Positions 2,496-46,966 of a stretch of 64,000 bases of DNA are shown here, in pieces. The stretch covers positions 62,001 to 126,000 of IMG/VR virus record IMGVR_UViG_3300042484_002457. One strand, given 5' to 3'. The notes under the pieces are model-generated. The model was given only the letters and a program-made list of their open reading frames with translations, was not told where the DNA came from and made no database searches. A program made the position numbers and the translations under genes. Numbering within the stretch: position 1 is the stretch's first letter; each line of letters begins with the position of its first letter.

Positions 2496-3174
2496 ATTCA
2501 GCTTCGGGCACACGAGTATGTGTGTTTTTGCTTCCCAACAAAATAACAATTCGTTGTCCGACCACAGTGTCTAACATCATTACAATACATCCGCCAGCAG
2601 CTCGTATGTAACCAGTTTTGCTTATTGTATAAGTTTGATTCACTAGACGATTGGTGTTATAAATCATTGTTTTTCCAATGCGTAGCACTGCGGACTGACT
2701 GGATTCTACAATTTCTTTATAGTTTTTGGCGGCCAGTACCATGGCCACTAAGTCTCTACCAGTGCTTATATTCATTACGCCAAGCCCGGTAGAATCTACA
2801 AATTTTGTATGACGCATGTTTAATGTCCGTGCCTTGGCATTCATTGCCAGCAAGCAACTGTCTCGACCGCCAGGATAATTGCGACATAGTGTAGCTGCTG
2901 CATTATTATCACTTTTAATCAGTGCCAATTGCAGCAGCTGACGGCGTGTGTGCAGACCTATTTTTTTATCAAGATCTTGCTGTGCATCAAGAACCACCAT
3001 GGCAGTCATTAATTTAGTGATACTGGCAATGCTGCGTAGTTCGTGTGAATTTGATTCTTGTAGTATAGCCCCTGCTTGATCAGCAACCACCCAAGAATGT
3101 GCAGTGACTGTGACGGCTGATGCAGTAACTGCAAAAAACGACACCACTAACGCAAACACATAGTTCATGATCAC
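2476..3174 (-). CDS. D-alanyl-D-alanine endo/carboxypeptidase, peptidase S11 (PBP7-like)
   Basis: Signal peptide; SxxK (ASITK), SxN (SDN) and KTG motifs. Confidence 0.9.
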   Translation of the reverse strand: MIMNYVFALVVSFFAVTASAVTVTAHSWVVADQAGAILQESNSHELRSIASITKLMTAMVVLDAQQDLDKKIGLHTRRQLLQLALIKSDNNAAATLCRNYPGGRDSCLLAMNAKARTLNMRHTKFVDSTGLGVMNISTGRDLVAMVLAAKNYKEIVESSQSAVLRIGKTMIYNTNRLVNQTYTISKTGYIRAAGGCIVMMLDTVVGQRIVILLGSKNTHTRVPEAEFISRSF

Positions 3175-5222
3175 TTGCTGGTAGCTCGGTATATTCCGTC
3201 CCAGTCACTGGGCAAGCGTGCTGAACGTAGGTCTTGTATGCGTTCAATCATGGCATCATAATAGGCTTCGAACTCATGATCAAATTCTGTTTTAAGATGT
3301 TGAGCCAATTCTGCCGCCGCTGCCCACTTTTGTGCACGGTACAGTTGTAAGAATCGTGTATGATCTTGCTTGGCCTCAGCATGCGAGCCGCTGGGTGCGG
3401 CCAAAACTGTGTAGATGCGCACACCTTGTATTTTGCCTTTGACAGCAATTTCATCCAGTTCTAAAGTAAAGAAATTGGTCTGTACATGGCGTGCTGTTTG
3501 CTCACCTAGAACAATTTTGACACCATACGGCTTAGACTGGCCCTCGAGTCTTGACGCCAAATTAACACCGTCGCCAAGACAAGTGTAATCAAACCGCTGA
3601 CTGCTACCCATGTTACCCACAACAACGGTGGCACTATTAATGCCAAGACCCATACCAAAAGGTGGTACGCCTTCTCTTGTAATTTCTGCGTTGAATGCAT
3701 CTAAACTTCCTATCATTTCCAGTGCTGTTTCCACGGCGTGTCGTGCATGATCAGCATCGTCCAAGGGTGCGTTCCAAAATGCCATTTGTGCGTCACCAAT
3801 GTATTTGTCCAGGGTACCATTGTTTTCAATTATTTTGGCAGTCATAGCAGTCATGTAACGATTCATGATCCGAGTCAAGCCCTGAACGTCTTTACCGTAG
3901 TGTTCGCTTATTGTAGTAAATCCGCGAACGTCTGTAAACATAATTGACAACTCGCGTTCTTCTCCGCCTAATTGCAGCAGTTCAGGATTCTGTTGCAATT
4001 TCTCCACCATGGCCGGACTCAAGTATGTGCCAAACTGTTTCTTTATTTGTTGCTTTTGTAAGAACTCTGAAACGAACTTGACCCCGTAGGCATGCAGAGC
4101 GACCAGGATTGTGCCACTTGCAAAGGCAGTTGCGTCGAATAGCCATAAATGATTGCCAAATGCGTACCTACTACCAGCAATGCCAGCAGCACATAAAATA
4201 ATAACTGTCGCCAATCCAACATAAGTCCACCTTGTTAAAATTAATAATACAATACCTGCCACAGCAATGGCCAAGATTTCCGCACCATCTGCGTAGTCGG
4301 GACGCACAATGTTTGTGCCTGAGGCCAAGGTATCTAGTACAGCGGCCTGCAAGTGGTGCGGATATACTTCTCCTCTTGCAGTGCTGACTGGGTTGTTGAG
4401 CCCAGCTGCGGTGAGCCCAACAATGACGATTCCACCTTGGAAATCCTTTGGCAGATCAGCCAAGGAGTGCTCCTGTGGTCGGGATGCCCAATCCACCCAG
4501 ATTCTACCGTAGTTGTCTGTTGCAATTTTTCCAAATTGTGGAATTCTAACTGCTTCAATAACTCCTGCATTGACTCGAACCTGGAAGCTGGGGTCACCAG
4601 CGGCAACTCTAAGGGTTTCGAGACTGATTGAGGGGTAGAGCTGCCCGTTGACTGCAACAACCTGGGGGACTCGGCGTACGACGCCGTCCACTTCAGGCAA
4701 AGTGTTAACAATACCAATACCGCTTGCTGCTTCATTTAGGGACCTCACATTGGGTTGAATGTTTCTGTAGGGAATTCCAGGGTTGCCATCGCCTATTACA
4801 GAAACTCCTGGGCGATATGGTGGGTGCTGTGCCTTGACGGTGTTATTGGTGGCCACATGCGGAAGCACCACTGTGCTCTTTTGCAGCTGGCGAGACAAGG
4901 CAACATCTTGACCAAATCTATCAGCATCAGGCATAAAAATGTTAAACACAATTACACCAGCGTTGCGATTTTCTAGATCACGTATGATGTCGGCGTATTG
5001 ATTTCTGGGAAAAGGAAATTGACCACGTTGTTCAATTGCAGCATCGTCAATGTTGACCACGTGCACCAGTTTGCTGGTGTCTACTGGTTTGCTGGTGATT
5101 AGCGTGTCAAAATAACGCAGTCTCACGCTTTCCACAAATGCAGTGTCTGCAATACGTATGCCCAACACCAAGATCAAGGTGAAGATAGCAGTCCAAGGAG
5201 TTAGTAGTATTTTTTTCCACAT
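3171..5222 (-). CDS. CHASE2-domain class III adenylate cyclase
   Basis: Periplasmic CHASE2 (DGVVRRVP), three TM helices, FTDVRGFT, DKYIGDA, GDGVNLASRLE. Lys/Asp residues indicate ATP specificity. Confidence 0.93.
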   Translation of the reverse strand: MWKKILLTPWTAIFTLILVLGIRIADTAFVESVRLRYFDTLITSKPVDTSKLVHVVNIDDAAIEQRGQFPFPRNQYADIIRDLENRNAGVIVFNIFMPDADRFGQDVALSRQLQKSTVVLPHVATNNTVKAQHPPYRPGVSVIGDGNPGIPYRNIQPNVRSLNEAASGIGIVNTLPEVDGVVRRVPQVVAVNGQLYPSISLETLRVAAGDPSFQVRVNAGVIEAVRIPQFGKIATDNYGRIWVDWASRPQEHSLADLPKDFQGGIVIVGLTAAGLNNPVSTARGEVYPHHLQAAVLDTLASGTNIVRPDYADGAEILAIAVAGIVLLILTRWTYVGLATVIILCAAGIAGSRYAFGNHLWLFDATAFASGTILVALHAYGVKFVSEFLQKQQIKKQFGTYLSPAMVEKLQQNPELLQLGGEERELSIMFTDVRGFTTISEHYGKDVQGLTRIMNRYMTAMTAKIIENNGTLDKYIGDAQMAFWNAPLDDADHARHAVETALEMIGSLDAFNAEITREGVPPFGMGLGINSATVVVGNMGSSQRFDYTCLGDGVNLASRLEGQSKPYGVKIVLGEQTARHVQTNFFTLELDEIAVKGKIQGVRIYTVLAAPSGSHAEAKQDHTRFLQLYRAQKWAAAAELAQHLKTEFDHEFEAYYDAMIERIQDLRSARLPSDWDGIYRATSK

Positions 5223-13909: not shown

Positions 13910-13937
13910 AGAGCCCCGCAAGGGGCTTTTCTTTTGG
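13910..13937 (+). terminator. Intrinsic terminator, copy 1 of a 28-bp direct repeat
   Basis: AGCCCC-GCAA-GGGGCT followed by a T-tract; identical to 15051-15078. Confidence 0.9.
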
Positions 13938-13953
13938 CAAAATTGTTGTGTGT

Positions 13954-13971
13954 TTGTAACAAAATTGTAAC
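13954..13971 (+). promoter_or_regulatory. Pho box
   Basis: TTGTAAC-AAAA-TTGTAAC, an 11-bp-period direct repeat resembling CTGTCAT-AAAA-CTGTCAT, upstream of pstS. Confidence 0.7.
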
Positions 13972-14017
13972 ACATTTTGACCTAAATACATGTGTCACTA
14001 ACACAAGGAGACTCACA

Positions 14018-15022
14018 GTGAAAAAACTATTTGCTATTCTCGTAGCCGCAGTAACAATTTCTGCACAGGCTGCAGACATCACAGGGGCAGGTGCCACCTT
14101 CCCTTATCCAATCTATGCCAAGTGGGCTGAAGGCTACAAAAAAGCCACAGGCACTGGTATGAACTATCAAAGTATCGGATCATCGGGCGGCATTCGTCAA
14201 ATCAACGCAAAGACTGTGGACTTTGGTGCCACAGATGCTCCAGTAAGCGGTGAAAATTTGGACAAGCAAGGGCAAGTACAGTTTCCTGCAATCATTGGCG
14301 GAACAGTTCCTGTTGTTAATCTAGATGGTTTTAAACCAGGTGAACTACGCATCACAGGACCAGTCATGGCCGAAGTGTTCTTGGGCACGATCAATCGGTG
14401 GAATGATCCCAAACTTGTAGCATTGAATCCAGGTAAGACATTGCCCAACACAGAAATCACCATTGTACATCGTGCTGATGGTTCAGGTACAACATTCAAC
14501 TGGACAGACTATCTTGCCACAGTAAGCCCAGAGTGGCTACAACGTGTGGGTCGTGGTGCCGCAGTCAAGTGGCCAGCAGCCACGTCAGTAGGTGGCAAAG
14601 GCAACGAAGGTGTGGCTGCCAACGTGAACCGCATCAAAGGTTCAATTGGTTATGTAGAGTATGCTTATGTCAAGAAAAACAACATGACATTCCTGCAACT
14701 ACAAAATCGATCAGGACGGTATGTTAGTCCAGATGATTCAACATTTGCCGCAGCCGCAGATGGTGCTGATTGGTTCTCAGTTCCTGGTATGGGATTGAGC
14801 ATTGTGGATCAACGTAATCCTGCGGCTTGGCCAGTGAGTTCAGCAAGTTTTATCATCATGTACAAGACCCCTGCCAACAAGGCCAACAGTGACGAAGTGT
14901 TAAAATTCTTTGACTGGGCATTTAAGAATGGCAAGAAAGATGCTGCTGACTTGGACTATGTGGCATTACCTGACACGTTGACACGTCAGATCCGTGAGCG
15001 TGTTTGGACACAGATCAAGTAA
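14018..15022 (+). CDS. pstS: Phosphate ABC transporter substrate-binding protein
   Basis: GTG start after AAGGAG; signal peptide; GAGATFP, YQSIGSSGG, RADGSGTT, IGYVE. Confidence 0.97.
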   Translation: MKKLFAILVAAVTISAQAADITGAGATFPYPIYAKWAEGYKKATGTGMNYQSIGSSGGIRQINAKTVDFGATDAPVSGENLDKQGQVQFPAIIGGTVPVVNLDGFKPGELRITGPVMAEVFLGTINRWNDPKLVALNPGKTLPNTEITIVHRADGSGTTFNWTDYLATVSPEWLQRVGRGAAVKWPAATSVGGKGNEGVAANVNRIKGSIGYVEYAYVKKNNMTFLQLQNRSGRYVSPDDSTFAAAADGADWFSVPGMGLSIVDQRNPAAWPVSSASFIIMYKTPANKANSDEVLKFFDWAFKNGKKDAADLDYVALPDTLTRQIRERVWTQIK

Positions 15023-15078: not shown

Positions 15079-15107
15079 TTGACTCAAAATGCCCAATTTG
15101 CTACAAT
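15079..15107 (+). promoter_or_regulatory. Sigma70 early promoter (cassette family)
   Basis: TTGACT-17-TACAAT with the conserved cccaatttg spacer. Confidence 0.8.
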
Positions 15108-15626: not shown

Positions 15627-15836
15627 ATGAACGAACGAATTAAGGAACTAGCCGATAAGGCAGGTGTACGAAGCATCTATTTCGAAGGCGAAAGTATTCA
15701 AAAACTTGCCGAGTTGATTGTGAAAGAATTTTCAAAGCAGGTTCAAATTGAAGGTCGCTTTGGGCTCGAACGAGACCAGACTTTGATTCGGCTTTGCTGT
15801 GAAAATGCCAAGAAACATTTCGGAGTTGAGGAATGA
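15627..15836 (+). CDS. MNERI/KFAELIV/HFGVEE microprotein 1
   Basis: Three conserved blocks shared with five other ORFs. Confidence 0.8.
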   Translation: MNERIKELADKAGVRSIYFEGESIQKLAELIVKEFSKQVQIEGRFGLERDQTLIRLCCENAKKHFGVEE

Positions 15837-16072
15837 ACGAACGAATTCGAGAACTTGCTGAACAGGCTGGATTTTATTTTTACGATATGCACGATATTGA
15901 CGGCCAAGACTTAGGTGAATCTATTGAAGCGGATAAGTGGTCTGTTGCCGAAAAGTTCGCCGAGTTGATTGTGAAAGAATGTCAAACGGTTGTTGAATGG
16001 GCAATCAGTGTAGATTCTACAATCGACCGAGTGCCTATGTTGATCCAAGAACATTTCGGAGTTGAAGAATGA
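15833..16072 (+). CDS. HFGVEE-family microprotein 2
   Basis: MNERIRELA...EKFAELIVKEC...HFGVEE. Confidence 0.8.
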   Translation: MNERIRELAEQAGFYFYDMHDIDGQDLGESIEADKWSVAEKFAELIVKECQTVVEWAISVDSTIDRVPMLIQEHFGVEE

Positions 16073-16250: not shown

Positions 16251-16496
16251 ATGGGATGGGTAGTTTACGAGGTTGAGTCTGGTCGCATGATCAAGTATTA
16301 CAAAACGCCCAGCCCAGCCAAGTCTGAAGTAACACGACAGAAAAATTTTACCCGTGAAATGCAGGCTCAGTACCGTAACCATCGTGTTCGTGAGTACGCA
16401 GCCTGCTCATATCGTGACTATGAAGGTCAGTTGATGGGCCTGCGTGGTGCAGACTTTAAATTTTGGCAATTTTGCAACGCACAACCCAACACTTGA
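16251..16496 (+). CDS. Hypothetical protein
   Basis: AAGGAG RBS. Confidence 0.65.
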   Translation: MGWVVYEVESGRMIKYYKTPSPAKSEVTRQKNFTREMQAQYRNHRVREYAACSYRDYEGQLMGLRGADFKFWQFCNAQPNT

Positions 16497-16521
16497 CCAA
16501 TAATGCTTGTTTTGCTATAAT
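16493..16521 (+). promoter_or_regulatory. Sigma70 promoter
   Basis: TTGACC-17-TATAAT with extended TG; ATG 9 nt downstream. Confidence 0.8.
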
Positions 16522-16530
16522 TACACTGTT

Positions 16531-16680
16531 ATGAAGCCCATATCTTTTGTACTGCAACCACCACGTCAGCGTCGACATCAAGCACTGTTTGATTCGGACT
16601 TGCCGTTTCGTGGCCGTGCGGAACAGCCCAAAACAGTGTACAAACGCCAACCCAAACACCGAAAGACTGAACAGGAATAA
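16531..16680 (+). CDS. 49-aa ArfA-like protein (not in ORF track)
   Basis: ALFDSDLPFRGRAEQPKTVYKRQPKH resembles the ArfA core ALLHDPLFRQRVE...YMRKGKH. Confidence 0.55.
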   Translation: MKPISFVLQPPRQRRHQALFDSDLPFRGRAEQPKTVYKRQPKHRKTEQE

Positions 16681-16681
16681 C

Positions 16682-16909
16682 ATGACTGTACCAAACGAAC
16701 GCACCCGAGCAGTGATACATACCGAGCGGTTCTTGAGTGATCTCCTGGACCCAAAAAAGACGCCGCGAGTACCTCGTGCCATTCGACAACGTGCCAGTTC
16801 ATTGTTGAGACATTACCCCGGTGAGTTCCACATGAACACAATTGCGGATCGCGAAGATGCTGCTGATCACAGTTTGTCAATCAAGGTTTTTGGAAAGAGC
16901 TGGTCATGA
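16682..16909 (+). CDS. BPSL0761-like hypothetical protein
   Basis: MT.P.ERTRAV...FL..L...VP..IR..A..LLRHYP. Confidence 0.6.
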   Translation: MTVPNERTRAVIHTERFLSDLLDPKKTPRVPRAIRQRASSLLRHYPGEFHMNTIADREDAADHSLSIKVFGKSWS

Positions 16910-17145
16910 ACAAACGAATTCGAGAACTTCATATACAGGCGCAACAAGAGGCATGGAATGAACCAATCGATATTGAAAATTGTGCAGTAGAAGATATAAA
17001 AGGATTCAGTCAACAAGTTTACGAAAAGTTCGCTGAGTTGATTGTTCTCGATACAATTAAAAATTGTCGTGATATGTTTATGGTGAATAGTGTTAGTTGG
17101 AATCTCTTAAATGAGAAACTAGAACATTTCGGAGTTGAAGAATGA
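16906..17145 (+). CDS. HFGVEE-family microprotein 3
   Basis: MNKRIREL...EKFAELIV...HFGVEE. Confidence 0.8.
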   Translation: MNKRIRELHIQAQQEAWNEPIDIENCAVEDIKGFSQQVYEKFAELIVLDTIKNCRDMFMVNSVSWNLLNEKLEHFGVEE

Positions 17146-17372
17146 ACCAAGTTTTAGTAAACCTGCTGTCTAATCGAGCAGTAAGATTGGGTGAGCACTC
17201 TTGGCAATGGGCCGAGAAAAAGACTGGCAATCCTTCCTTGAAAAATTCTGTGACTTCTCGTATGTTTCGGTCCGATCTTGTAGAAGTGGTCGGTGCAGAA
17301 ATGAAACTTACTGCTATGGGTCGTATACAAGCAGAACAACATTTCGGAGTTGAGGAATGTTTAAGAAGCTAA
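17142..17372 (+). CDS. Unrelated ORF carrying the HFGVEE tail
   Basis: Bounded by two junction repeats; reads through HFGVEE into CLRS. Confidence 0.65.
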   Translation: MNQVLVNLLSNRAVRLGEHSWQWAEKKTGNPSLKNSVTSRMFRSDLVEVVGAEMKLTAMGRIQAEQHFGVEECLRS

Positions 17373-17922: not shown

Positions 17923-18090
17923 ATGAAAATAACCATGACAGGTGAGCACGAAGGTAAATCTGTAACGATTGCCGTTTGGGAATATTCTCCCGAGATTGTT
18001 AAAGGCAATCCTATCGAAGTAGAAGAAAAATTATGGCTTGCTATCAAACAGCAAATGACCCACTACATTAAGAAGGTGATTGAAGAATGA
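17923..18090 (+). CDS. 55-aa hypothetical protein (not in ORF track)
   Basis: Starts in the junction repeat at 17904; ends ...IEE with ATGA overlap. Confidence 0.6.
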   Translation: MKITMTGEHEGKSVTIAVWEYSPEIVKGNPIEVEEKLWLAIKQQMTHYIKKVIEE

Positions 18091-18365
18091 ACAAACAACT
18101 GATTAGAGATTTAGCCATCACAGGTGGCATTTATGATTGTATTTGTGATCCTTACGACAAGTTAAAGAACGGTGATTACTACAGTAGTGTAATGGTTGAT
18201 TTGGAGCGTTTCGCTGAGAAGATTGTGAAAGAATGTACTGAACAAATCAAGACACAGGGTATCAGCGCCTCTAGTGAAGATTATGGCGATTATGAAATAG
18301 GATTTAACGCAGGGTTATTTCATGCTCTCTACACAATCAAACAACATTTCGGAGTTGAAGAATGA
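18087..18365 (+). CDS. HFGVEE-family microprotein 5
   Basis: ERFAEKIVKEC...HFGVEE. Confidence 0.8.
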   Translation: MNKQLIRDLAITGGIYDCICDPYDKLKNGDYYSSVMVDLERFAEKIVKECTEQIKTQGISASSEDYGDYEIGFNAGLFHALYTIKQHFGVEE

Positions 18366-18592
18366 ACGAACGAATTAAACAAATCACAGGACAGGTACTA
18401 GATGAAATAGTGCCCGAGACTTGGGTAGCGTTGGGCTACGACAAAATCAAAGAGATTCAAAACCGCACAGCCGAGTTGATTGTTCGGGAATGTGCCAAGT
18501 TTCTAGATGAGAATTCTGGCTATGATGAATGCAACAATTCTTGGCATCCTGAACCAGAAGATTTATTACAACATTTCGGAGTTGAACTATGA
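18362..18592 (+). CDS. HFGVEE-family microprotein 6
   Basis: MNERIK...AELIVREC...HFGVEL. Confidence 0.8.
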   Translation: MNERIKQITGQVLDEIVPETWVALGYDKIKEIQNRTAELIVRECAKFLDENSGYDECNNSWHPEPEDLLQHFGVEL

Positions 18593-18804: not shown

Positions 18805-18867
18805 GCCTAGCAATCCACGTTCGGTACGTGGCGTAGTAATATTTGAGTTAAAGTGGGGCTAAATATC

Positions 18868-19458
18868 ATGCAGGAATCAAAAATGACCACAGAAACAGAT
18901 GTTACCACAAGCCATGGGCAAGAGCTTGCAGATGCAGGTCTCATGGTACTCATGGGTGAGGTTGAAAACGATTCTATTAAACCTGTGATTGAATGGATCC
19001 TGTATGAAAATCATGTGAGCAAGAAAAAGCGACAAGAGCTATTGCTCATGATCTGTAGTGAAGGCGGAGATTTAAGTGCCGCCTTTGCCTTGATTGACGT
19101 GATGCGTAGCAGTCGTTTGCCTGTCAAAACAGTGGGACTGGGCCAAATTGGATCTGCTGGCTTGTTGATTTTTCTTGCTGGCACACCTGGTCGACGTGTG
19201 CTAACTCCCAACACCAGTATTCTAAGTCATCAGTTCAGCTGGGGCAGTGATGGCAAAGTACATGAACTGTTTGCTACCATGAAAGAGTTTGAGCTTACAC
19301 AAAAGCGCATGGTACAGCACTACAAAGAATGTACCGGGCTTGGTGAAGAAGAAATTCGCACAGCCTTGTTGCCACCCCATGATGTGTGGCTCACAGCAGA
19401 AGAAGCTCTTGCACTAAATGTGTGCGATGTAATCAGTCCAGCAATGCGTCAGGCTTGA
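18868..19458 (+). CDS. Divergent ClpP-like protease (peptidase S14)
   Basis: CSEGG, GQIGSAG (Ser), SHQ (His), HDVWLTAEEA (Asp). Alternative start at 18883. Confidence 0.85.
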   Translation: MQESKMTTETDVTTSHGQELADAGLMVLMGEVENDSIKPVIEWILYENHVSKKKRQELLLMICSEGGDLSAAFALIDVMRSSRLPVKTVGLGQIGSAGLLIFLAGTPGRRVLTPNTSILSHQFSWGSDGKVHELFATMKEFELTQKRMVQHYKECTGLGEEEIRTALLPPHDVWLTAEEALALNVCDVISPAMRQA

Positions 19459-46744: not shown

Positions 46745-46966
46745 ATGGCTAAAAAAGAAGATACTATTACAGTGGAAGGTGTTGTTGAGGAAATCATGCC
46801 CGCAGCAATGTTCAGAATCCGACTTCACAATATTGAAAAAACAGTACTTGGTTACTTGTCGGGTCGCATGAGAAAAAACAATATCAAAGTTTTGTTGGGT
46901 GATCGAATCGAAATGGAGTTTAGTCCATATGATCTGACTCGCGGTCGTATTACCCGACGCAAATAA
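46745..46966 (+). CDS. infA: Translation initiation factor IF-1
   Basis: MAK.ED.I.VEG.V.E...SG.MRKN.I..L.GD....[12 protein letters not shown]. Confidence 0.95.

What the first reader, a model, noticed from the sequence alone, without database searches (positions are those of the whole stretch)
16493..16680. Unannotated ArfA-like ORF on its own near-leaderless promoter
Seen: 49-aa ORF MKPISFVLQPPRQRRHQALFDSDLPFRGRAEQPKTVYKRQPKHRKTEQE, 9 nt after a consensus -10, missed by the ORF track. Known: the ArfA core is AL...F+.R.E...Y.R..KH; ArfA recruits RF2 to non-stop ribosomes, and E. coli arfA is controlled through a hydrophobic tail and RNase III cleavage. This ORF stops right after the basic core and lacks the KGKG segment. 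Inference: an unregulated phage rescue factor or antagonist, possibly countering mRNA-cleaving defences; IF-1 in the same window fits translation control.
Basis: partly seen in the sequence, partly recalled or inferred. Interest (0 to 1): 0.62.

Follow-up and report, generated by a model that had tools for sequence, protein, structure and literature searches.

The report
Phage-encoded tail-less ArfA ribosome-rescue homolog
A 49-residue gene in an uncultured 210-kb phage is a real, conserved, divergent relative of the bacterial ribosome-rescue factor ArfA; it lacks the parts that normally keep ArfA switched off, so the phage probably makes an always-on rescue factor early in infection.

Summary
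Window 16531-16680 (+) is a 49-codon ORF. It starts 9 nt after a TTGACC-17-TGnTATAAT promoter (16493-16521) and has no Shine-Dalgarno sequence.

It is a real gene:
- It is the only frame open in all 10 distinct related phage loci.
- pN/pS is about 0.25 in this frame, and the ratio is reversed in the shifted frames.
- The promoter and its spacing are conserved in 12 of 13 loci.

It is an ArfA homolog, shown by profile methods only:
- It fails the Pfam and NCBIfam ArfA models.
- The family profile hits only ArfA chains in the PDB (E 0.004).
- hhalign against 30 diverse bacterial ArfAs gives probability 93.6%, E 2e-7. The best of 200 column shuffles scored 20.7, against 37.3 for the real alignment.
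- The family HMM ranks 21 ArfAs above all 4,796 other (decoy) frames of the phage genome.
- It matches a GenBank-annotated phage ArfA (Pseudoalteromonas phage J2-1) at E 2.5e-10.

A18, F25, the R-x-R-x-E stretch, Y-x-R and K-H are conserved. The KGKGS loop, the hydrophobic tail and the regulatory hairpin are absent.

Six of seven other phage ArfAs examined are tail-less too, so this is a new variant of a known kind, not a new class. RF2 recruitment and rescue activity are inferred, not tested.

The parts
16493..16498 (+). -35 hexamer TTGACC. It overlaps the TGA stop codon (16494-16496) of the upstream 81-aa ORF.
   Evidence: It is invariant in 12 of 13 related loci.
16513..16521 (+). Extended -10 element TGC-TATAAT, 17 nt after the -35 hexamer.
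   Evidence: It is conserved in relatives. It is one of 42 strict promoters in the genome, all on the + strand.
16522..16530 (+). Nine-nucleotide stretch TACACTGTT between the -10 and the ATG, with no Shine-Dalgarno sequence. The transcription start is inferred at about 16528 (G, 7 nt after the -10), which would give a leader of about 3 nt.
   Evidence: The sequence is. The spacing is 7-9 nt in relatives.
16531..16680 (+). ArfA-like coding sequence, 49 aa plus TAA (protein P0001).
   Evidence: translation. (purifying selection, and the only frame open in all relatives). (ArfA homology).
16579..16623 (+). Residues 17-31 (QALFDSDLPFRGRAE). They align to E. coli ArfA residues 17-30, the RF2-contacting helix and strand: A18=A18, L19=L19, F26=F25, R27=R26, R29=R28, E31=E30.
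   Evidence: The hhalign alignment is and the invariant columns. The roles of ArfA residues 15-31, F25 and A18 are from PMC6299226 and PMC8012679.
16624..16659 (+). Residues 32-43 (QPKTVYKRQPKH), the basic segment. It aligns to the ArfA tail that enters the mRNA channel: Y37=Y39, R39=R41, K42-H43=K44-H45. There is a 3-residue deletion where bacterial ArfAs have KGKGS.
   Evidence: KGKGS (once KGRGS) is present in the 30 bacterial ArfAs. The K-H pocket is described in PMC8012679.
16660..16677 (+). Short polar C-terminus (RKTEQE) followed by a true stop codon. There is no hydrophobic tail and no LAA-type ending.
   Evidence: tail comparison. (no RNA hairpin, z = +0.86).
16682..16909 (+). Downstream gene, starting 1 nt after the stop codon: a BPSL0761-family protein of 75 aa, probably on the same transcript. 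This pairing is not conserved in more distant relatives.
   Evidence: NF041728, E 1.3e-18. (the nearest protein-atlas clusters are mostly viral). (different downstream genes in L003-L013).

Best explanation
The ORF encodes a phage version of ArfA that is built directly in the mature, active form.

Shown:
- It is a conserved protein-coding gene.
- It is homologous to ArfA.
- It keeps the ArfA residues known to contact and activate RF2 (A18, F25 equivalent, R-x-R-x-E) and to sit in the empty mRNA channel (Y-x-R, K-H).
- It ends at a normal stop codon 10 residues after Y-x-R. This is about where E. coli ArfA ends after its mRNA is truncated.
- It has no hydrophobic tail and no hairpin.
- It sits behind a conserved consensus sigma-70 promoter with an extended -10 and a leader of at most a few nucleotides.

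Inferred:
- Host RNA polymerase transcribes it early in infection.
- The mRNA is translated without a Shine-Dalgarno sequence, in leaderless mode or close to it.
- Because the mRNA has a stop codon, the product escapes the tmRNA tagging that keeps bacterial ArfA off.
- The protein inserts its basic C-terminal part into the vacant mRNA channel of ribosomes stalled at mRNA 3' ends.
- It then recruits and activates host RF2 by adding a beta-strand to RF2, so the peptide is released untagged and the ribosome is recycled.
- The benefit to the phage would be to keep ribosomes available when infection, or a host RNase-type response, floods the cell with truncated mRNAs.
For: Gene reality:
- Variable sites by codon position are 16/16/38. 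Mean pS is 0.58 against pN 0.14 in this frame, and the ratio is reversed in the shifted frames.
- It is the only frame open in all 10 distinct loci.
- One relative (L010) has a GGAG Shine-Dalgarno sequence before the same ATG instead of the promoter.
- JGI calls the same 49-aa product in many samples.

Homology:
- A profile of the 13 closest proteins hits six PDB sequences, all ArfA (E 0.0037-0.07).
- hhalign of the 20-sequence family against 30 ArfAs that pass the Pfam cut-off gives probability 93.6%, E 2.1e-7, score 37.3. The 200 column shuffles gave mean 9.8, sd 2.5 and a maximum of 20.7.
- The family HMM ranks the J2-1 phage ArfA (35.3 bits) and 20 bacterial ArfAs above every one of 4,796 other frames of the phage genome, used as decoys.
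- Across 301 Pseudomonadota genomes, the four best hits of the family profile are the arfA genes themselves.
- The J2-1 ArfA passes PF03889 at 41 bits, also lacks KGKGS, and matches the family at hhalign probability 96.8%, E 2.5e-10.

Functional residues:
- The invariant columns are A18, L19, F20, D21, L24, P25, F26, R27, R29, E31, Y37, R39, K42 and H43.
- They map onto ArfA A18, F25, R26, R28, E30, Y39, R41, K44 and H45.
- The roles of these ArfA residues are described in PMC6299226 and PMC8012679.

Loss of regulation:
- The 30 bacterial ArfAs have 13-46 residues after Y-x-R. These tails are hydrophobic or end in ...AA.
- This family has 10-13 polar residues after Y-x-R (scored in 19 of its 20 sequences), and 6 of 7 other phage ArfAs have 7-10.
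- No RNA structure is predicted in the transcript.

Promoter.
Against: - The protein itself fails Pfam PF03889 and NCBIfam, with no hit even at E 10.
- Relatives reach only about 12 bits against PF03889.
- An HMM of bacterial ArfAs scores the ORF at 7.9 bits, which is not significant within its own genome.
- The KGKGS loop, conserved (once as KGRGS) in the 30 bacterial ArfAs sampled, is deleted.
- Residues 1-16 do not align with the ArfA N-terminus, which becomes ordered together with the RF2 switch loop on activation.
- The host is unknown, so it is not known that it has a compatible RF2.
- ArfA-RF2 pairs are species-specific (PMC8012679).
- No expression, transcription-start or activity data could be obtained.
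Confidence: 0.6

Rival explanations
1. A dominant-negative ArfA mimic. [quoted passage not shown] It would thereby block host rescue (tmRNA-SmpB, ArfA, ArfB) or sequester RF2 to the phage's advantage.
For: - The KGKGS loop is deleted, and the N-terminal 16 residues do not align with the ArfA N-terminus.
- Ordering of that N-terminus accompanies RF2 activation.
- ArfA(A18T) shows that binding and RF2 recruitment can be separated from activation.
Against: - A18, the position whose mutation separates recruitment from activation, is invariant.
- F26 and the R-x-R-x-E stretch, which contact RF2, are the most conserved part of the protein. A pure channel blocker would not need them.
- N-termini also differ widely among bona fide bacterial ArfAs.
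- Blocking ribosome rescue would also trap the ribosomes the phage needs.
Confidence: 0.12
2. An ArfA-derived small basic protein that has moved to another ribosome- or RNA-linked job. For example, it could occupy the mRNA channel of free 30S or 70S particles to favour leaderless phage mRNAs, without using RF2.
For: - The phage has about ten promoters with an ATG 5-6 nt after the -10, which are likely leaderless genes, and it has its own IF-1.
- The protein fails the curated ArfA models.
- KGKGS is missing.
Against: - The RF2-contact positions are conserved.
- The same tail-less design is seen in phage ArfAs that do pass the Pfam model. This argues for the ordinary ArfA activity.
- There is no direct evidence for any other role.
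Confidence: 0.12
3. Chance resemblance: an unrelated, lysine- and arginine-rich small phage protein whose motif only looks like ArfA.
For: - The protein is short and basic, so low-complexity matches are easy.
- Single-sequence scores against ArfA models are not significant.
Against: - Column-shuffled controls never exceed a score of 20.7, against 37.3 for the real alignment.
- Only ArfA is hit in the PDB.
- ArfAs outrank 4,796 decoy frames.
- The arfA genes are the top hits in 301 genomes.
- The J2-1 ArfA bridges the two groups.
Confidence: 0.04
4. Not a protein gene. The promoter serves the downstream BPSL0761-family gene, and the 49 codons are an untranslated leader or a regulatory leader peptide.
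For: - There is no Shine-Dalgarno sequence.
- The next gene starts 1 nt after the stop codon and has an AGGA 6 nt upstream of its own start.
Against: - There is strong purifying selection on the amino-acid sequence.
- The ORF is kept in loci where the downstream gene is different.
- In L010 a Shine-Dalgarno sequence precedes the same ATG.
Confidence: 0.02

Closest known systems
Bacterial ArfA (E. coli YhdL, Pfam PF03889)
   Same: - Small basic protein.
- Aligned core A-L-x-x-D-x-L-F-R-x-R-x-E ... Y-x-R-x-x-K-H.
- Keeps A18, the F25 equivalent and the K-H motif.
- Its length matches the mature, active 52-55-aa form.
   Different: - Below the Pfam cut-off.
- A 3-residue deletion removes the KGKGS loop.
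- One extra residue (P25) before the Phe.
- An unrelated N-terminal 16 residues.
- A true stop codon, no hydrophobic tail, no hairpin or RNase III site, so no control by tmRNA.
- A short-leader promoter.
- Encoded by a phage.
Phage-encoded ArfAs in public phage records: Pseudoalteromonas phage J2-1, Pseudomonas phage pf16, Salmonella phage Arash, Erythrobacter phage XM05, Roseobacter phage CRP-212, Ralstonia phage RsoM2USA, Citromicrobium phage RXM, and pelagiphage HTVC027P gp30
   Same: - Phage-borne and 40-74 aa long.
- Of the seven whose sequences were read, six end 7-10 residues after Y-x-R at a real stop codon.
- The J2-1 protein also lacks KGKGS and is the closest match (hhalign E 2.5e-10).
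   Different: - The seven sequences read here all pass PF03889, and HTVC027P gp30 is reported to carry a PF03889 domain. This family does not.
- Most of them keep KGKGS and the canonical N-terminus.
- None is close in sequence. tblastn of P0001 against 50,697 phage records found nothing significant.
- HTVC027P gp30 was taken from the paper only, not compared here.
Pfam DUF7230 (PF23876)
   Same: - Six of the 13 close relatives first aligned (A1) give weak hits (best E 1.4e-4, 22.3 bits).
- The J2-1 ArfA passes both DUF7230 and ArfA, so the two Pfam families overlap.
- The one bacterial DUF7230 member seen also lacks KGKGS.
   Different: - All scores for this family are below the 27-bit cut-off, and P0001 itself gives no hit.
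- The bacterial DUF7230 member (L133) has a long hydrophobic tail and does not match the family profile (hhalign E 0.16).
ArfT (Francisella) and BrfA (Bacillus), the other release-factor-dependent rescue factors
   Same: - Small proteins with a basic C-terminal part that enters the mRNA channel.
- ArfT (40 aa) is not regulated the way ArfA is.
- BrfA shares the K-H motif.
   Different: - These are described as independent inventions with low similarity to ArfA.
- ArfT lacks the F25-type hydrophobic residue and works with RF1 or RF2.
- The present protein keeps the ArfA-specific RF2 contacts.
- No sequence comparison with ArfT or BrfA was run here.

Membership tests
ArfA (PF03889) | Score at or above the curated Pfam cut-off (25.5 bits), or a match to an NCBIfam ArfA model. 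| tested here: not met
   - No hit for P0001 at E up to 10.
- No candidate in the whole phage genome.
- Relatives reach about 12 bits.
- My own HMM of bacterial ArfAs gives 7.9 bits.
ArfA (PF03889) | Common descent detectable by profile-profile comparison or through bridging sequences. | tested here: met
   - hhalign probability 93.6%, E 2e-7, with shuffle controls.
- PDB hits are ArfA only.
- ArfAs rank above 4,796 decoy frames.
- The arfA genes are the top hits in 301 genomes.
- Bridge through the J2-1 ArfA.
ArfA (PF03889) | RF2-contacting segment with A18 and the F25 hydrophobic anchor (ArfA residues 15-31). | tested here: met
   By alignment only. A18, L19, F26 (=F25), R27, R29 and E31 are invariant in 20 sequences.
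ArfA (PF03889) | Conserved KGKGS loop in the part that enters the mRNA channel. | tested here: not met
   The motif is replaced by P-K-T-V, a 3-residue deletion, in all 20 family members. It is present (once as KGRGS) in the 30 bacterial ArfAs. According to PMC6299226, the individual residues are not essential in E. coli.
ArfA (PF03889) | Basic C-terminal segment with Y-x-R and the K-H motif. | tested here: met
   Y37, R39, K42 and H43 are invariant and align to Y39, R41, K44 and H45.
ArfA (PF03889) | Synthesis from a truncated, non-stop mRNA (hairpin or RNase III site plus a hydrophobic or degron tail), so that tmRNA represses it. | tested here: not met
   - A TAA stop codon lies 6 codons after K-H.
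- The tail is polar.
- No significant RNA structure is predicted (z +0.86).
ArfA (PF03889) | RF2-dependent peptidyl-tRNA hydrolysis on non-stop ribosomes, and synthetic lethality with ssrA. | not testable with these tools
   This needs biochemistry and genetics. The one complex prediction with E. coli RF2 gave no verdict and counts neither for nor against.
DUF7230 (PF23876) | Score at or above the Pfam cut-off (27 bits). | tested here: not met
   The best relative scores 22.3 bits, and P0001 gives no hit.
Leaderless mRNA genes | The transcript 5' end lies at, or within a few nucleotides of, the start codon. | tested here: inconclusive
   - The 9-nt distance from the -10 to the ATG implies a leader of about 1-3 nt if the start site is in the usual place.
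- About ten other promoters in the genome have an ATG 5-6 nt after the -10.
- No read data were available.

The most novel reading that the evidence does not exclude
Phage ArfAs, and this KGKGS-less family in particular, may not be simple housekeeping copies. They could be a counter-defence or takeover device. In this reading, an always-on rescue factor has an altered mRNA-channel probe (the 3-residue loop deletion) that relaxes the strict 'no more than 3 nt of mRNA past the P site' rule of bacterial ArfA. Such a factor could free ribosomes stalled by host RNase-type abortive-infection systems, or by phage-induced host mRNA decay, and it would release phage peptides untagged instead of tmRNA-tagged.
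Probability: 0.15. Interest if true: 0.75.

Novelty: new variant of a known kind. Interest (0 to 1): 0.45.

Why it matters
ArfA is usually described as a back-up that bacteria keep silent through an unusual non-stop-mRNA circuit. Here a phage lineage carries ArfA with that circuit stripped away. The protein ends where the active bacterial fragment ends, and it is driven by a strong early-type promoter.

The comparison made here shows the same 'pre-truncated' design in six of seven other phage ArfAs. This suggests that phages repeatedly take ribosome rescue into their own hands.

The family also gives a natural experiment on which ArfA parts are dispensable (the KGKGS loop and the canonical N-terminus) and which are not (A18, F25, R-x-R-x-E, Y-x-R, K-H).

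It shows that curated ArfA models miss a divergent phage branch. It also shows that small phage genes of this kind are sometimes mis-annotated, for example as 'ribosomal protein L2' or hidden under an opposite-strand ORF.

No functional study of any phage ArfA was found in the paper library searched.

Tried and rejected
- Pfam, NCBIfam and PHROGs scans of P0001 gave nothing usable. The best was phrog_6310 at E 0.11.
- phmmer of P0001 against PDB sequences found nothing.
- BLASTP against E. coli ArfA gave E 0.026 over 21 residues, which is only suggestive.
- blastn of the region against 50,697 phage records found no match. tblastn of P0001 gave only chance-level hits.
- A pattern scan of one genome per bacterial species for the family found no relative. 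A profile search of 301 Pseudomonadota genomes found no family member, only weak hits to true arfA genes.
- An HMM of bacterial ArfAs against all frames of the phage genome scored the ORF at 7.9 bits, rank 2, which is not significant.
- hhalign against the single bacterial DUF7230 member gave E 0.16.
- No release-factor domain was found in the phage genome.
- Complex prediction of E. coli RF2 with the family alignment scored 0.13 against a mark of 0.32. That is no verdict, and it is not evidence either way.
- Host inference failed. The closest PstS relatives are unnamed metagenome proteins. Two large phage proteins match only uncultured viruses from a freshwater spring.
- My first promoter pattern had a spacer one base too short and matched nothing. 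It was redone in a script.
- The opposite-strand ORFs over the locus (108, 86 and 100 aa) were rejected because they are interrupted in relatives.
- The alternative TTG start at 16507 was rejected. It lies inside the promoter spacer, and the sequence upstream of the ATG is not conserved as protein.

Full report
**What is there.** The window is bases 62001-126000 of a 209.5-kb IMG/VR virus record. The record has 44.6% G+C and eight tRNA genes.
- Upstream lie TTGACC (16493-16498), a 17-nt spacer, TG (16513-16514) and TATAAT (16516-16521). Nine nucleotides then precede the ATG, with no Shine-Dalgarno sequence.
- The upstream 81-aa ORF ends inside the -35 hexamer.
- A 75-aa BPSL0761-family gene starts 1 nt after the stop codon.

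**Is it a gene?** The exact protein and 11 clusters of relatives (71-98% identical to it) are present in the large protein collection. Thirteen viral contigs of up to 300 kb carry a copy.
- Across 11 distinct coding sequences, variable sites fall 16/16/38 by codon position.
- Mean pS is 0.58 against pN 0.14 in this frame. In the two shifted frames pS is below pN.
- It is the only one of the six frames open in all ten distinct loci. The longer opposite-strand ORFs seen in the window are broken in relatives.
- In locus L010 the promoter is replaced by a GGAG Shine-Dalgarno sequence in front of the same ATG. This fixes the start codon.
- The gene keeps its place between a conserved 91-aa gene and a ClpP-like gene, while its immediate neighbours change. 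It is therefore not a leader for one particular downstream gene.

**The promoter.**
- The strict pattern TTGAC[ACT]-N16-18-TAnAAT occurs 42 times on the + strand of the genome and never on the - strand.
- About 15 copies share a long cassette that ends in an AGGAG Shine-Dalgarno sequence roughly 30 nt after the -10.
- About ten others have an ATG 5-6 nt after the -10 that opens an ORF of 52-342 aa. These are probably true leaderless genes.
- The ArfA-like gene is of the second type but with 9 nt between the -10 and the ATG (7-9 nt in relatives). With a start site at the usual distance, this gives a leader of 1-3 nt.
- In 12 of 13 loci the -35, the TG, the -10 and the 17-nt spacing are invariant while the middle of the spacer drifts.
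- The start site itself is inferred.

**Is it ArfA?** Simple tests say no.
- There is no Pfam or NCBIfam hit at E up to 10 and no PF03889 candidate in the genome.
- Relatives score only about 12 bits.
- An HMM I built from 30 bacterial ArfAs scores the ORF at 7.9 bits, no better than a random frame of the same genome.

Profile-level tests say yes.
- A profile of the family hits six PDB sequences, and all six are ArfA (E 0.0037-0.07).
- I collected 30 ArfAs that pass the Pfam cut-off from 301 evenly sampled Pseudomonadota genomes.
- hhalign of the 20-sequence phage family (A2) against them gives probability 93.6%, E 2.1e-7, score 37.3.
- Two hundred column shuffles of the phage alignment gave mean 9.8, sd 2.5 and a maximum of 20.7. 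The reversed alignment scored 8.9.
- The family HMM was searched against the 30 ArfAs, eight other sequences and 4,797 stop-to-stop frames of the phage genome. It puts the J2-1 phage ArfA and 20 bacterial ArfAs above the first decoy.
- In the six-frame translation of the same 301 genomes, the four best hits of the family profile are the arfA genes. No genome holds a true family member; the best score is 20.7 bits (one search compared).
- JGI's pipeline already names several relatives ArfA.

**The bridge.** tblastn of E. coli ArfA against the phage collection found ArfA-like ORFs in several cultured phages.
- Seven of them pass PF03889: Arash, RsoM2USA, XM05, pf16, J2-1, CRP-212 and RXM.
- The ArfA of Pseudoalteromonas phage J2-1 is annotated as such in GenBank. 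It has a canonical ArfA N-terminus but the same KGKGS-less C-terminal half as the present family.
- It matches the family profile at probability 96.8%, E 2.5e-10, without a gap.
- It also passes Pfam DUF7230, to which six of the 13 close relatives first aligned give sub-threshold hits. DUF7230 and ArfA therefore overlap.

**Anatomy against the known mechanism.** In the hhalign alignment the phage residues map onto E. coli ArfA as follows:

| Phage residue | E. coli ArfA residue |
|---|---|
| A18 | A18 |
| L19 | L19 |
| F26 | F25 |
| R27 | R26 |
| R29 | R28 |
| E31 | E30 |
| Y37 | Y39 |
| R39 | R41 |
| K42-H43 | K44-H45 |

These are precisely the invariant columns of the phage family. The literature read here (PMC6299226 and PMC8012679) says:
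- ArfA residues 15-31 contact RF2 by adding a beta-strand to it.
- F25 sits in the RF2 pocket formed by V198 and F217.
- A18T still recruits RF2 but cannot activate it.
- The basic C-terminal part, with the K-H motif, fills the empty mRNA channel.
- The KGKGS residues are not individually essential.
- A 40-aa truncation is inactive.
- The mature, active protein is 52-55 aa.

The phage protein differs in four ways:
- A 3-residue deletion removes the KGKGS loop.
- There is one extra residue (P25).
- The N-terminal 16 residues are conserved within the family but cannot be aligned to the ArfA N-terminus, which varies among bacterial ArfAs too.
- The C-terminus is short.

**Regulation.** The 30 bacterial ArfAs continue for 13-46 residues after Y-x-R. 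These tails are hydrophobic or end in ...AA.
- In the 19 of the 20 family sequences that could be scored, the protein stops after 10-13 mostly polar residues.
- Six of the seven other phage ArfAs stop after 7-10 residues.
- The transcript from 16528 to 16720 has no structure beyond that of shuffled sequence (z +0.86), so there is no equivalent of the arfA hairpin or RNase III site.
- The gene therefore encodes directly what E. coli obtains only by truncating its mRNA. Because it has a stop codon, its product should not be tagged by tmRNA.
- That is sequence-based inference.

**Function.** I take the most likely function to be RF2-dependent rescue of non-stop ribosomes, made early from a host-type promoter (confidence about 0.6).
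- The main rival is a dominant-negative mimic, given the altered N-terminus and loop. The conservation of A18 and of the RF2-contact residues argues against it.
- A repurposed ribosome-binding role is a second rival.
- Chance resemblance and 'not a gene' are nearly excluded.
- A complex prediction with E. coli RF2 gave no verdict and is not used.
- The host could not be identified. The phage has no release-factor gene. It does have an IF-1 homolog at window 46766-46960.

**Novelty.**
- Phage ArfA genes exist in public records.
- One paper reports that pelagiphage HTVC027P gp30, an ArfA-domain gene, is highly transcribed (PMC12753301). Another paper lists ArfA in phage RXM (PMC8953757).
- I found no functional study of a phage ArfA in the library.
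- The present family is a divergent, KGKGS-less, tail-less branch. It was seen only on viral contigs and is missed by the curated models.
- It is a new variant of a known kind, of moderate interest.

**Limits.**
- No reads tool could be used.
- The large representative-library search was not run, because kinship was already settled.

Noticed in passing
Whole genome (G000). Window examples at 15079, 15373, 24855, 25226, 26158, 39097, 40022, 40314, 40869.: All 42 strict sigma-70-type promoters lie on the + strand and none on the - strand. About 15 share a near-identical cassette: TTGACC, an A/T-rich spacer ending in TTTGC, TATAAT, ATACACATAGCAAAGCAAAACAGGAG, then the ATG. This looks like a repeated early-promoter and leader module.
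   Followed up: partly
Promoters starting at window 9906, 24347, 32201, 45493 and 60232. Outside the window, at genome positions 18017, 127099, 128148 and 194202.: About ten consensus promoters have an ATG 5-6 nt after the -10 that opens an ORF of 52-342 aa. This phage probably uses true leaderless mRNAs widely. It also carries an IF-1 homolog (window 46766-46960).
   Followed up: partly
Window 15627-15836, 15833-16072, 16906-17145, 17142-17372, 18087-18365, 18362-18592.: A family of six small paralogous genes (69-92 aa) flanks the ArfA-like gene. All end in ...HFGVEE or a close variant. Copies are also found in related loci L002 and L010. Function is unknown.
   Followed up: no
Window 3171-5222 (-).: A 683-aa phage gene with a CHASE2 sensor domain and an adenylate/guanylate cyclase domain. 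This is an unusual signalling gene for a phage.
   Followed up: no
Window 13934-15022 (+) and 18853-19458 (+).: A PstS-like phosphate-binding protein, with thousands of close metagenomic relatives, and a ClpP-family protease bracket the small-gene region.
   Followed up: partly
L126 (Salmonella phage Arash, gp99c), L129 (Pseudomonas phage pf16), L127 (Ralstonia phage RsoM2USA).: ORFs that pass the Pfam ArfA cut-off are mis-annotated or unannotated in public records. In Arash the ORF is labelled 'ribosomal protein L2'. In pf16 and RsoM2USA only an opposite-strand hypothetical protein is annotated over the site.
   Followed up: partly
L109, L110, L116, L117, L119, L122-L125 (bacterial arfA loci).: Many short bacterial ArfAs end in ...LAA...MAA...KAA or ...QAA, which resembles the end of the ssrA tag. 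This may be a genetically encoded degron used in place of the non-stop-mRNA trick.
   Followed up: no
L130 (phage J2-1 ArfA) and L133 (bacterial DUF7230 member).: Pfam ArfA (PF03889) and DUF7230 (PF23876) overlap, because one protein passes both cut-offs. DUF7230 was found in only 1 of 301 Pseudomonadota genomes sampled, in a genome with no PF03889 hit.
   Followed up: partly
Window 16682-16909.: The BPSL0761-family protein (NF041728) lies immediately downstream. The nearest protein-atlas clusters are about 90% viral, so this 'bacterial' family seems to be largely phage-borne.
   Followed up: no
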